NCBI RefSeq assembly: GCF_033153115.1
Contig: NW_026889778.1
Location: 43,524,001 to 43,588,000 of the forward strand
Reading direction: 5' to 3'
Source: Saccostrea echinata
Lineage: Eukaryota
DNA: 64,000 nucleotides
In this document: positions 31,060 through 33,039 of the stretch, in pieces
How the letters are laid out: each line of letters starts with the position of its first letter
Position numbering within the stretch: the stretch's first letter is position 1
Made by a program: the position numbers and the translations under genes
The notes under the pieces: generated by a model
The model's database searches: none
Seen by the model: only the letters and a program-made list of their open reading frames with translations
Told to the model about the DNA's origin: nothing

Positions 31060-31345
31060 TTAATTAAGAAAAAAGATATCATTTTTAGACTTCCATTGGA
31101 ATATGACATGAAGTCGGTCACGTGATCAAATTTTATAACGCCCGAAGGGCGTTATAGTAGATTTGATCACGTACTGACTTCATTTTATATCCCAATGAAA
31201 CTCAAAAAAATGATATTCTATTCCTTATATTTATATTTTACTTTTATTCGTGTTACAAGGAAAATAGGCACTGTTTAGACTTTGTTATTGAAAGTCATTT
31301 AATTAGTATTGTTATATAAGGAAAGACATCAGCAAATGTAAATAT
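31060..31345. mobile_element. Palindrome-headed non-autonomous element (Crypton-like)
   Basis: ~170-bp imperfect palindrome centred on GCCCGAAGGGC, followed by a TATTTATAT...AAATGTAAATA segment. Same architecture as 38793, 56642 and 58876. Confidence 0.6.
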
Positions 31346-31420
31346 CACAATTTGTTAAATAAGAAAGTCTTTATAAAGGAACAAAACATTTGTTTCTTTC
31401 TTTTAGTTTGACGAAAGACA

Positions 31421-32462
31421 ATGAAGTTTACTTGGTAAGTTTGATACATTATCAAAAGATTATACTTTTTACTCATCCAATCTACATGTATGTACTTCAA
31501 TCCTGTTTTGTTTTTAATTAAAAAGTAGATAAACAAATAAAATAAACGGATATAGAAAAAATACTGCTATTGCTGTGCCTTATCCTAACAATCATTTCAG
31601 AAATAAGTTACCATTTTAAAACTTTCATCATGATGTAAATACTCGTACTATATGGGTTGATAATGTGATCAATTTCAATACAACCCGCAGGTTTCTTTTT
31701 TCATAGTAAATTGACATAATTACATGTAAAAGAAATCACCTTCTTATTTATTACCTGATTAAGGAATGATATAAATAGGGATTGCTTTTGTATTTCTTTA
31801 GTTTTACTTAAAAAAATTATCAATTACAGGTATTTTTCTGCTATTCTTGTTTTTGGAATCTGTGCCAGTTTGCAAGATTCTACTTTACAAGACAGCTCTG
31901 CCGTAGGAAATTCCGAAAGCGTTTTTAAAAGGTTATAAATATAACATTAAATGGTAAAATACTTAATTGTCTAATTTTCTTTTATTGTAAAATCATATTG
32001 TTCTACAATGTTTAAAATATTTCATTCTGATACATCCTAACCAAGAGCTAATATTAAAAAAACATGTTCTACTACCCTTAATATGTAAGCATTATTTCTT
32101 TTATTCATATTCAATCAGCATCATATCACTTCGTAAATTCTGATCCGTAACTGTTTCTTTTTTACTGACAGAGCTGGGAAAATAAAGTTGACAAAAATTG
32201 CATTAAAAGGTTAGCAAGGGATTTAAAAAGGAACGGGTCACTAGCAAGGAAGGCTGTAGATCGGTTGGAATATTGGTCTGGTGGACGTATCAGTGCAGAT
32301 AAAATAGTACAAGTCATAGATGGCGTAGCAGACAGACTGAATAGGTATCAAGTTGCAACCTGTGGATATTTCGCAGATGTAGGAGTCTCCCTTGGTATTA
32401 ATCGTAGTATTGCATATCAAATCTGCAACGTTGCTCTCGATTTACTCAGTATAATTTTGTAA
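31421..32462 (+). CDS. Small secreted protein precursor (signal peptide, acidic/Ser spacer, ~95-aa amphipathic helical domain)
   Basis: Exons 31421-31434, 31830-31931 (or -31902) and ~32172/32174-32462 give MKFTWYFSAILVFGICASLQDSTLQDSSAVGNSESVFKSWENKVDKNCIKRLARDLKRNGSLARKAVDRLEYWSGGRISADKIVQVIDGVADRLNRYQVATCGYFADVGVSLGINRSIAYQICNVALDLLSIIL. The first intron is canonical; the exon 2/3 junction is ambiguous. Confidence 0.8.
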
Positions 32463-33039
32463 AAGGCAATTATGACTATAAACAACCAAGCATCTTGAAA
32501 ATATATCGTTGTTCTTTTCTTCCGGAAAACGCTTCGAGAACATGAATTTCGTTTGGATGGAATGATGTATGACTGATGATAAAATGGATATTTAGGTGAA
32601 TTTTTTTTTTTTGCACTTGCTAATCAATTTTAATCAACTCCATGCGTAAGACGTAACATTATAAGTTGAAAAACTAATTTTTAAGTTCTTTCTACTTTTA
32701 TATAAAACAAAAGTAAATTTTTCACGGTATGTTAAGTGTATCTTATTCCTTTTCATAATTTAGTTTACAGGAGAACAAGATGTCCCCGTATATCAACTTA
32801 AAGCGAAGGTTAAACTTTCTCAAATGTCTGATAACTTTTTTGCGTGACAAGGAATTTTTGCCCCGAAATAATATTTCTTTGATCTGCCCTCAAACTGAAA
32901 TTGCTTCCTACAGGCTTGCATTGAATAAACTCTTTGTCATTAATCAATTGCATATACAAAAATATTTTAAAACCAATTACATCACCCTAATTTAGTTTTT
33001 AGAATAAAGAAAGAAAAATTAAACGTTACTATATTCTGT

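What the first reader, a model, noticed from the sequence alone, without database searches (positions are those of the whole stretch)
31421..32462. Orphan secreted helical protein resembling a bacteriocin/saposin-like antimicrobial precursor
Seen: a clean signal peptide, an acidic Ser-rich spacer, a cationic amphipathic segment (CIKRLARDLKRNGSLARKAVDRL) and a hydrophobic C-terminal helical hairpin (GYFADVGVSLGINRSIAYQICNVALDLLSIIL), with three Cys in the mature region, all on one exon. Known: signal/anionic propiece/cationic mature region is the usual layout of invertebrate AMP precursors. Inference, from recollection only: the ending resembles small secreted Firmicutes bacteriocin-like proteins (ADxLx...LGxxxSxAxxI), raising a possible novel AMP family or horizontal origin.
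Basis: partly seen in the sequence, partly recalled or inferred. Interest (0 to 1): 0.75.

Follow-up and report, generated by a model that had tools for sequence, protein, structure and literature searches.

The report
Frame-broken oyster gene, orphan five-helix protein
This is a three-exon oyster gene from a tiny, undescribed bivalve family of secreted five-helix proteins, but as assembled its reading frame is broken, and nothing links it to bacteriocins, saposins or bacteria.

Summary
It belongs to a very small family. There is one paralog 105 kb away, one named homolog (Mytilus edulis "uncharacterized protein", 76% identical) and about seven unnamed clusters among 1.84 billion representatives.

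Members share a signal peptide, a variable pro-piece and a conserved Lys-Arg at the exon 2/3 junction. The roughly 93-residue domain after it is predicted (pLDDT 92) to be one compact five-helix bundle.

No Pfam, PDB-sequence or fold match was found, including to saposins or AS-48.

The mature domain is conserved and the pro-piece is not, the reverse of known mussel antimicrobial peptide families.

In the family frame, exon 3 of the window copy stops after 13 codons, because of a one-base register change at 32205-32208. "SWENKVDKNC" and the first Cys are off-frame text. The paralog is out of register in exon 2. No reads could be listed, so a real frameshift and an assembly error remain undecided.

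The parts
31370..31379 (+). TATA-like box (tttataaagg) about 45 nt before the ATG, inside a block (31361-31420) that is 83% identical to the paralog
   Evidence: its function as a promoter is inferred
31421..31434 (+). Coding exon 1 (ATG AAG TTT ACT TG), followed by the donor gtaag
   Evidence: same exon and donor in the paralog (12 of 14 bases identical)
31830..31931 (+). Exon 2: the rest of the signal peptide plus the Ser-rich pro-piece. It ends ...FK + AG, the first two bases of the junction Arg codon. Donor is gttat
   Evidence: its peptide occurs at only two places in the genome, here and in the paralog
32170..32171 (+). Family acceptor AG (cag|A). A second AG at 32172-32173 would restore the long frame but is a GAG directly behind a CAG
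   Evidence: Four of four genomic read-through ORFs of relatives place the junction Arg here. The weakness of GAG acceptors is general knowledge
32172..32214 (+). Start of exon 3 in the family frame: (R)AGKIKLTKIALKG, then TAG at 32212-32214
   Evidence: homologous to AGGVKLTKYALRK of the paralog and GKLRLSKYALKK of the mussel
32205..32208 (+). A4 run where the register changes by one base relative to the paralog. This is the only gap column in the 292 columns of exon 3
32205..32462 (+). The remaining 85 codons of the conserved domain (helices 1-5, both family Cys, NGS sequon) plus the stop. The frame is open but one base off the family frame of the exon's start
32463..32620 (+). 3' untranslated stretch, 76% identical to the paralog. 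No canonical AATAAA was seen

Best explanation
The locus is a three-exon gene of a very small, bivalve-only, undescribed family of secretory pre-pro-proteins. Members have a signal peptide and a short, poorly conserved pro-piece that ends in a conserved Lys-Arg exactly at the exon 2/3 junction. A domain of about 93 residues follows.

That domain is predicted to fold as a single compact five-helix bundle. Helix 1 is strongly basic and amphipathic, helix 3 is acidic, and helices 4-5 are apolar. In six of ten members one Cys pair links helices 4 and 5. An N-x-S/T sequon sits in the loop between helices 1 and 2.

Inferred mechanism for intact members such as the mussel protein: cleavage after Lys-Arg by a convertase in the secretory pathway, then release of a folded, basic, probably glycosylated extracellular protein. 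It would act by binding a specific partner (a receptor or a polyanionic surface). It would not act as a linear membrane-disrupting peptide.

In this oyster genome the window copy changes register by one base 34 nt into exon 3, so the family frame stops after 13 codons. The paralog 105 kb away is out of register in exon 2. As assembled, neither copy encodes the full protein. My odds for the window copy: recent real frameshift (young pseudogene) about 0.55, uncorrected one-base assembly error about 0.3, rescue by the downstream AG about 0.07.
For: Gene structure and its duplicate.

Family size. The genome holds two copies. Seven proteins reached E<=0.001 among 1.84e9 representatives, six of them real. 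A second profile round added one more. The only named member is a Mytilus edulis uncharacterized protein.

Lys-Arg site. It is present in four of four sequences that include exon 2. The junction Arg is present in four of four genomic read-through ORFs.

Fold. pLDDT 86.4 / pTM 0.80 and pLDDT 92.3 / pTM 0.85, with the same five helices in both models.

Other features. Helix 1 has a hydrophobic moment of 0.6-1.1 and a charge of +3 to +6. The two Cys are both present in six of ten members and both absent in four of ten, never mixed. The sequon is present in seven of ten members (sequences printed).

Constraint. The window copy is 76% identical to both mussel-type proteins over 82 columns, while the pro-pieces are unalike. 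dN/dS against the paralog is 0.39 (16 synonymous and 23 non-synonymous differences; Fisher p 0.008). Exons are 82-86% identical, with one gap column each in exons 2 and 3. Introns are 70-71% identical, with 60 of 428 and 176 of 413 gap columns.

Frame breaks.

No extra decay. There are five window-derived against four paralog-derived residue changes.
Against: No RNA or DNA reads could be examined: no run was listed. Expression, splice junctions and the true lengths of the A4 and T9 runs are therefore unverified.

Both breaks lie in or beside homopolymer runs, where assembly errors concentrate. Both copies otherwise look well kept: splice sites are intact, the promoter block is conserved and the frames stay open. 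All of this also fits intact genes with two consensus errors.

The 'binding protein, not a membrane-active peptide' reading rests only on conservation pattern, predicted fold and the sequon. A basic amphipathic helix 1, a Lys-Arg site and (in the mussel) a strongly acidic pro-piece are also what a host-defence protein would show.

The species assignment (rock oyster) rests on a genome-size match and on other agents' unchecked notes. My own COX1 test gave no named close hit.
Confidence: 0.6

Rival explanations
1. The family is a new host-defence (antimicrobial or cytolytic) protein family. The pro-piece masks a cationic product that is released at Lys-Arg and attacks microbial membranes through the basic amphipathic helix 1-2 and the apolar helices 4-5.
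For: Signal peptide, pro-piece and Lys-Arg layout. The mussel pro-piece is strongly acidic. The N-terminal 36 residues carry +3 to +11 in all ten members, and the pI is 9-11.5 in nine of ten. Helix 1 is amphipathic beyond shuffles in eight of ten members at p<0.05. Colicin pore domains appear among the weak fold rows, at Z 4.3-4.9.
Against: The mature domain is conserved at 76% between oyster and mussel while the pro-piece is not. The abstract of PMC4558851, seen in the listing, describes the opposite for a mussel peptide family. There are only two copies. An N-glycosylation sequon is conserved. The domain is predicted to be one globular bundle, with helix 4-5 hydrophobicity too low for membrane insertion. 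One member has net charge 0. The colicin Z values are within noise.
Confidence: 0.2
2. Both oyster copies are intact and functional, and the two one-base register changes are consensus errors of the assembly at homopolymer runs.
For: The breaks lie at an A4 run (window) and a T9 run (paralog). They are the only indels in 409 coding columns, whereas introns are full of gaps. dN/dS is 0.39 and residue change is symmetric. Splice sites and the promoter block are conserved.
Against: Eight of nine near-full-length intronless HSP70 copies have uninterrupted frames of 631-649 aa. That is roughly 15 kb of coding sequence without a break, so the assembly is not riddled with indels. An A4 run is an unlikely error site. 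Two errors within about 0.8 kb of coding sequence would be a coincidence. Neither copy's protein appeared in the protein collection, although a 76% identical hit would have been listed.
Confidence: 0.3
3. The window copy escapes the break by splicing exon 2 to the second AG (32172-32173). This yields the long frame the reader read (..FK-S-WENKVDKNCIKRLARDL..) without a Lys-Arg site.
For: The phases fit: exon 2 ends with AG and C at 32174 completes a Ser codon, after which the frame stays open to 32462. AlphaFold still folds this version at pLDDT 86.
Against: The site is a GAG acceptor directly behind a CAG, and the first AG is normally used (general knowledge of the YAG consensus; not computed here). 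The paralog has the same cagag and uses the first AG for its conserved frame. The resulting N-terminus is unrelated to the family and loses the conserved Lys-Arg. Its first ten residues average pLDDT 66, against 80 for the paralog.
Confidence: 0.07
4. The gene was acquired from Firmicutes, or is a distant relative of small Bacillota bacteriocin-like proteins.
For: In protein-language-model space the mature domain's nearest Atlas clusters are Bacillota hypothetical proteins of 73-100 aa, scoring 0.91 (196 of 256 features), 0.88 and 0.87. The full mussel precursor scored 0.80 to Bacillota clusters, and its best structural row (TM 0.41) covered residues 47-139.
Against: By the tool's own figures, scores of 0.8-0.9 occur with shuffled proteins (0.9 or more in 4-10 of 100). 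No ids are returned, so no alignment could be made. HMMER read 1.84e9 proteins and found no bacterial relative except a spurious HTH-repeat protein at E 5.7e-4. None of 28 pattern matches in prokaryote genomes was confirmed, nor any of 262 in metagenomes or 26 in viral contigs. In 401 Bacillota genomes, 18 scored E<=0.05 where about 20 are expected by chance. The best score was 18.9 bits, and 15 of 19 matches lay inside frames of 256 aa or more. NCBIfam and PHROGs gave no shared family. The gene has introns at a conserved position, a signal peptide and a eukaryote-type promoter.
Confidence: 0.03

Closest known systems
Mytilus edulis uncharacterized protein XP_071126814.1 (P0002, 140 aa) and its unnamed relatives P0001, P0003-P0007, P0011
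   Same: True homologs. They share the same domain (72-77% identity; E 3e-50 to the family profile), the same Lys-Arg before the domain and the same intron position. The closer half of the family also shares the two Cys.
   Different: The mussel protein is an uninterrupted precursor with a long, strongly acidic pro-piece. The oyster copies have a short, weakly acidic, Ser-rich pro-piece, and each carries a one-base register change.
Mussel antimicrobial peptide precursor families (myticalins, PMC5577615; MgCRP-I, PMC4558851). Only the search listing and the start of each abstract were seen
   Same: A secreted pre-pro-protein with dibasic processing and a cationic product, in a lineage-restricted bivalve family.
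   Different: [quoted passage not shown] Myticalins are short linear peptides in a multigene family. Here the mature part is a conserved folded domain of 93 residues, the pro-piece varies, and the genome holds only two copies.
Saposin-like proteins (NK-lysin, amoebapores) and saposin-fold bacteriocins (AS-48, aureocin A53). Their features are recalled, not fetched
   Same: Small, basic, secreted all-helical bundles of four to five helices that could in principle act on membranes.
   Different: There is no sequence, Pfam or fold match. The family has two or zero Cys where saposin-like proteins have six. It has eukaryotic introns and a signal peptide, and no bacterial relatives.
Pore-forming helical domains (colicin S4 and N; Bcl-2 family)
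   Same: Apolar helices wrapped by amphipathic ones. These proteins appear among the weak structural rows.
   Different: Z is only 4.3-4.9 and the Foldseek E-values are above 1, which the tool itself rates as noise for helical bundles. This domain is about half the size, and its helices 4-5 are not hydrophobic enough.

Membership tests
Unnamed bivalve five-helix secreted protein family (type: Mytilus edulis XP_071126814.1) | Significant sequence match across the whole ~93-residue domain | tested here: met
   E 8e-36 and 8e-35 to P0001 and P0002. The profile returns the window copy at E 6e-42. Identity is 76% over 82 columns.
Unnamed bivalve five-helix secreted protein family (type: Mytilus edulis XP_071126814.1) | Signal peptide, pro-piece and Lys-Arg at the exon 2/3 junction, joined in frame to the domain | tested here: not met
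   The signal peptide, pro-piece and Lys-Arg are present. However, the family frame stops after 13 codons of exon 3, and the rest of the domain lies one base out of register.
Saposin-like proteins (SAPLIP) | Six conserved Cys forming three disulfides | tested here: not met
   Six of ten members have two family Cys and four of ten have none. The six-Cys rule is recalled.
Saposin-like proteins (SAPLIP) | Match to the saposin Pfam models or to the saposin fold | tested here: not met
   Pfam found 0 families for the window ORF. No saposin family matched any of the ten members at E<=10. No saposin-like chain appears in the top 50 rows of four fold searches. The tools warn that a missing row does not exclude a fold.
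Circular or leaderless class II bacteriocins (AS-48, aureocin A53 type) | Bacterial homologs, or a structural match to a solved bacteriocin | tested here: not met
   for sequence, and for fold. The only hint is a language-model similarity of 0.91 to unnamed Bacillota clusters, which could not be aligned.
Invertebrate antimicrobial peptide precursor layout (signal / anionic pro-piece / cationic mature part) | The three-part layout | tested here: inconclusive
   The layout is clear in the mussel protein. In the window the pro-piece carries only about -2, and the cationic part is one face of a folded domain.
Invertebrate antimicrobial peptide precursor layout (signal / anionic pro-piece / cationic mature part) | Antimicrobial activity and induction by infection | not testable with these tools
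   No run was listed. This needs a bench assay.

The most novel reading that the evidence does not exclude
The family is an ancient, so far undescribed class of bivalve extracellular proteins, shared by oysters and mussels. Its five-helix fold has no analogue among solved structures (best Z 5.5 for a pLDDT-92 model). It would be released by Lys-Arg processing and act as a signalling ligand or a folded host-defence factor. It may be distantly related to roughly 100-residue Bacillota proteins that only a protein language model currently links to it.
Probability: 0.2. Interest if true: 0.6.

Novelty: new variant of a known kind. Interest (0 to 1): 0.35.

Why it matters
If the family is functional, which the intact and strongly conserved mussel gene suggests, it adds an unstudied secreted protein with no recognisable fold to bivalve extracellular biology. 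It would be a candidate ligand or defence factor in commercially important oysters and mussels.

For this window the practical message is cautionary. Both oyster copies are out of frame as assembled. Any claim about an antimicrobial function or horizontal transfer from this locus would be premature.

The locus is also a compact test case for telling very young pseudogenes from homopolymer errors in this assembly.

Tried and rejected
Reads. The look-up of sequencing runs listed no run for 31300-32600, so read laying could not be called. Expression, junctions and run lengths stay unchecked.

Species check. One stop-free 131-residue piece of the mitochondrial COX1 gene was searched. The best hits were unnamed (75% identity), so this was uninformative. 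The oyster assignment rests on the genome-size match (923,105,932 bases against the 923.09 Mb printed for Saccostrea echinata in Table 2 of PMC12310953, a passage seen) and on other agents' notes.

Known families. Pfam, NCBIfam and PHROGs were run on all ten members at E<=10. No family was matched by more than two members. The PDB sequence profile gave a best E of 0.007, to a leucine-rich-repeat protein, which is not credible.

Fold. Two models were searched with Foldseek against the PDB and with VIA-align wide, and one with Foldseek against BFVD. None gave a hit at E<=0.001, and the best Z was 5.5-5.7.

Bacterial, viral or metagenomic origin: rejected. GTDB's Bacillota phylum was sampled (401 genomes). 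Clostridia-type phyla were not sampled. The short frames hit in G001 and G107 were inspected and are unrelated.

Truncated product as a short amidated peptide. The 13-mer after Lys-Arg ends in Gly, but its helical moment is 0.20 (shuffle p 0.70), so I dropped the idea.

Membrane hairpin or membrane anchor at the C-terminus: rejected on hydrophobicity.

Paralogs or shared signal exons elsewhere: none in the window or the genome. No coding neighbour was recognisable within about 8 kb.

Literature. Three sequence motifs and the mussel accession were found in 0 papers. Two keyword searches turned up nothing on this family. In PMC12564202 I saw passages only. It mentions secreted uncharacterised proteins of this oyster by contig number.

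Exon handling. Exons were never joined for any search. Exon 1 (14 nt) is too short to search. Exon 2 was searched only in the window and in the own genome. Exon 3 was used for everything else.

Full report
WHAT IS THERE. The window has 26-36% G+C. It lies at G000:C29:43524001-43588000 of a 923,105,932-base eukaryotic assembly. That size matches the 923.09 Mb printed for the rock oyster Saccostrea echinata in Table 2 of PMC12310953 (passage seen). Other agents' unchecked notes name the same species. My own COX1 test gave no named close hit, so the species is probable, not proven.

They lie on three exons, not one:
- Exon 1, 31421-31434 (ATGAAGTTTACTTG|gtaag).
- Exon 2, 31830-31931. It carries the rest of the signal peptide and the pro-piece DSTLQDSSAVGNSESVFK, and ends with the first two bases of an Arg codon.
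- A terminal exon starting behind the acceptor cag at 32169-32171.

A TATA-like box lies at 31370-31379. It sits in a block that is 83% identical to the paralog.

THE FAMILY. Only one other copy exists in the genome, 105 kb downstream. It is 76% identical at E 2e-40. A family profile found nothing more. The exon 2 peptide occurs only at these two loci, and the window holds no paralog.

The word-indexed search (candidates of 53-168 aa only) gave two proteins out of three candidates. One is an unnamed Logan ORF (P0001) and the other is Mytilus edulis 'uncharacterized protein' XP_071126814.1 (P0002, 140 aa).

HMMER read all 1.84 billion representatives with a four-sequence profile. It found seven proteins at E<=0.001. 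Six are real relatives (P0002-P0007). The seventh, P0008, is a bacterial protein with four HTH repeats that matches only profile positions 3-36 at E 5.7e-4, and I regard it as spurious. A second round with a ten-sequence profile added only P0011. The taxa of the unnamed records are unknown and were not traced.

Four genomic read-through ORFs (P0001, the P0003 cluster, P0004, P0006) show intron-like text ending in Arg directly before the domain. So the intron position and phase are shared across the family. P0002 and P0005 are uninterrupted precursors with signal peptide, pro-piece, Lys-Arg and domain. This suggests that spliced transcripts exist in other species (inference).

ANATOMY OF THE PROTEIN. 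Lys-Arg precedes the domain in four of four sequences that include exon 2. Two AlphaFold models agree on five helices at residues 8-20, 22-36, 42-55, 64-73 and 78-95:
- Window ORF with 4 sequences: pLDDT 86.4, pTM 0.80.
- Paralog exon 3 with 10 sequences: pLDDT 92.3, pTM 0.85.

Helix 1 is basic (+3 to +6) and amphipathic, with a moment of 0.6-1.1 that beats shuffles at p<0.05 in eight of ten members. Helix 3 is mostly acidic. Helices 4-5 have a mean hydrophobicity of only 0.3-0.5. The N-terminal 36 residues carry +3 to +11 and the rest is near neutral. One member has net charge 0.

The two family Cys are both present in six of ten members and both replaced (by Ala/Ser and Tyr) in four of ten. 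They are never mixed, as expected for a disulfide pair. An N-x-S/T sequon sits in the helix 1-2 loop in seven of ten members (sequences).

THE FRAME PROBLEM. In the family frame (junction Arg, then the domain) the window's exon 3 reads AGKIKLTKIALKG and stops at 32212-32214. These residues are clearly homologous to AGGVKLTKYALRK of the paralog and GKLRLSKYALKK of the mussel.

It becomes homologous only from codon 32205 onward. The DNA alignment shows one gap column, at the A4 run 32205-32208. It is the only gap in the 292 columns of exon 3. 'SWENKVDKNC' is therefore off-frame text.

A second AG at 32172-32173 would restore the phase. It is a GAG directly behind a CAG, which is a poor acceptor by general knowledge, and using it would delete the conserved Lys-Arg.

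The paralog has an intact exon 3. Its exon 2, read from its exon 1, gives FFFRSNRVW...RS*. The conserved frame FFFALIVFGICASLQ...FKR is one base off, and the change lies in a T9 run. So neither copy encodes the full precursor as assembled.

Most other evidence points to long-maintained genes:
- dN/dS is 0.39, from 16 synonymous differences on 60.3 sites and 23 non-synonymous on 194.7 (dS 0.33; Fisher p 0.008).
- Exons are 82-86% identical with one gap column each in exons 2 and 3. Introns are 70-71% identical with 60 of 428 and 176 of 413 gap columns.
- There are five window-derived against four paralog-derived residue changes, and the window's are conservative.

The breaks are therefore either very recent or artefacts. 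As a rough check of the assembly, eight of nine near-full-length intronless HSP70 copies have unbroken frames of 631-649 aa, so indel errors are not rampant. No run could be listed, and this remains undecided.

WHAT IT IS NOT. Pfam found nothing for the window ORF. No Pfam, NCBIfam or PHROGs family is shared by more than two of the ten members at E<=10. The PDB sequence profile found nothing credible. Foldseek against the PDB and BFVD gave no hit at E<=0.001. VIA-align against 48,161 chains gave a best Z of 5.7 and 5.5, to a polyamine synthase and IHF. The tool itself rates such values as noise for helical bundles. No saposin, NK-lysin, AS-48 or aureocin chain is among the listed rows.

Bacterial origin also found no support:
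- None of 28 pattern matches in 185,579 prokaryote species genomes was confirmed.
- None of 262 matches in metagenome contigs was confirmed.
- None of 26 matches in viral contigs was confirmed.

One lead remains. In the ESM Atlas the mature domain's nearest clusters are Bacillota hypothetical proteins of 73-100 aa, scoring 0.91, 0.88 and 0.87. The whole mussel precursor scored 0.80 to Bacillota clusters. Such scores occur with shuffled proteins, and no ids are given.

I tested the lead by running the profile on 401 Bacillota genomes. I reached them through a 16S primer match and the handles it gave. Eighteen genomes scored E<=0.05 where about 20 are expected by chance. The best score was 18.9 bits, and 15 of 19 matches lay inside frames of 256 aa or more. 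That is noise. Clostridia-type phyla were not sampled.

HOW IT PROBABLY WORKS. Shown: the gene structure, family membership, the Lys-Arg site, and a confident five-helix prediction.

Inferred: intact members enter the secretory pathway, are cut after Lys-Arg, and are released as a folded, basic, probably glycosylated 93-residue protein.

The mature domain is 76% identical between an oyster and a mussel. By general knowledge these orders separated in the early Palaeozoic. The pro-piece is unalike, there are only two copies, and a glycosylation sequon is kept. This is the pattern of a specific binding protein (ligand-like). It is the reverse of the conserved pre-pro region and hypervariable mature peptide that the MgCRP-I abstract reports (PMC4558851; listing only).

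A folded host-defence protein that binds polyanionic surfaces through helix 1 remains a real alternative (about 0.2). A linear antimicrobial peptide does not fit.

NOVELTY AND PRINT. Three sequence motifs, the mussel accession and two keyword searches found no paper on this family. Supplements were closed. Those of PMC12564202 might list the transcript.

I confirm the Lys-Arg site and the helices there, and add that its exon 2 is out of register.

VERDICT. This is a real, orphan, bivalve-restricted gene family with an unrecognised fold. The bacteriocin, saposin and horizontal-transfer readings are not supported, and antimicrobial function is untested and somewhat disfavoured. Interest is moderate to low at 0.35. 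Exons were never joined for any search.

Noticed in passing
window 31065-31227: An imperfect palindrome about 200-350 nt upstream of the ATG. The outer arms are 22 nt at 82% complementarity, and by eye longer inner arms surround gcccgaagggc. It looks like a MITE-type insertion. No equivalent stretch aligned in the part of the paralog's upstream region that I compared (L002 from base 421).
   Followed up: partly
L002 about 1178-1304 (G000:C29, paralog intron 2): A (TA)n microsatellite of about 125 nt in the paralog's second intron, absent from the window copy.
   Followed up: no
G000:C294 (two identical copies), C425 and C123: The assembly holds two COX1 types. The copy on C425 is only 84.6% identical to that on C294 over 1658 bases, and C123 scores like C425. 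Possible causes are a nuclear mitochondrial insert, a second mitochondrial lineage or a contaminant. This was not resolved.
   Followed up: partly
G000:C37:936433-1006954: A cluster of five full-length intronless HSP70 genes plus one shorter copy (528-aa frame) within about 70 kb. A sixth full-length copy lies at C37:281655.
   Followed up: no
window 20184-22316: Harbinger-type transposase and Myb-like ORFs (ORFs of 119-228 aa), already reported by this scan as s1-808020.
   Followed up: no
window 8175-8531 and 14659-15075: Two isolated open frames. One is Cys-rich and EGF-like (..CHPREKVCVCDTGYQWKEGQC..). The other is 138 aa with a hydrophobic N-terminus and an acidic tail. They may be exons of neighbouring genes.
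   Followed up: no
window (whole): The window contains 319 N. Their positions were not examined and nothing was filled in.
   Followed up: no
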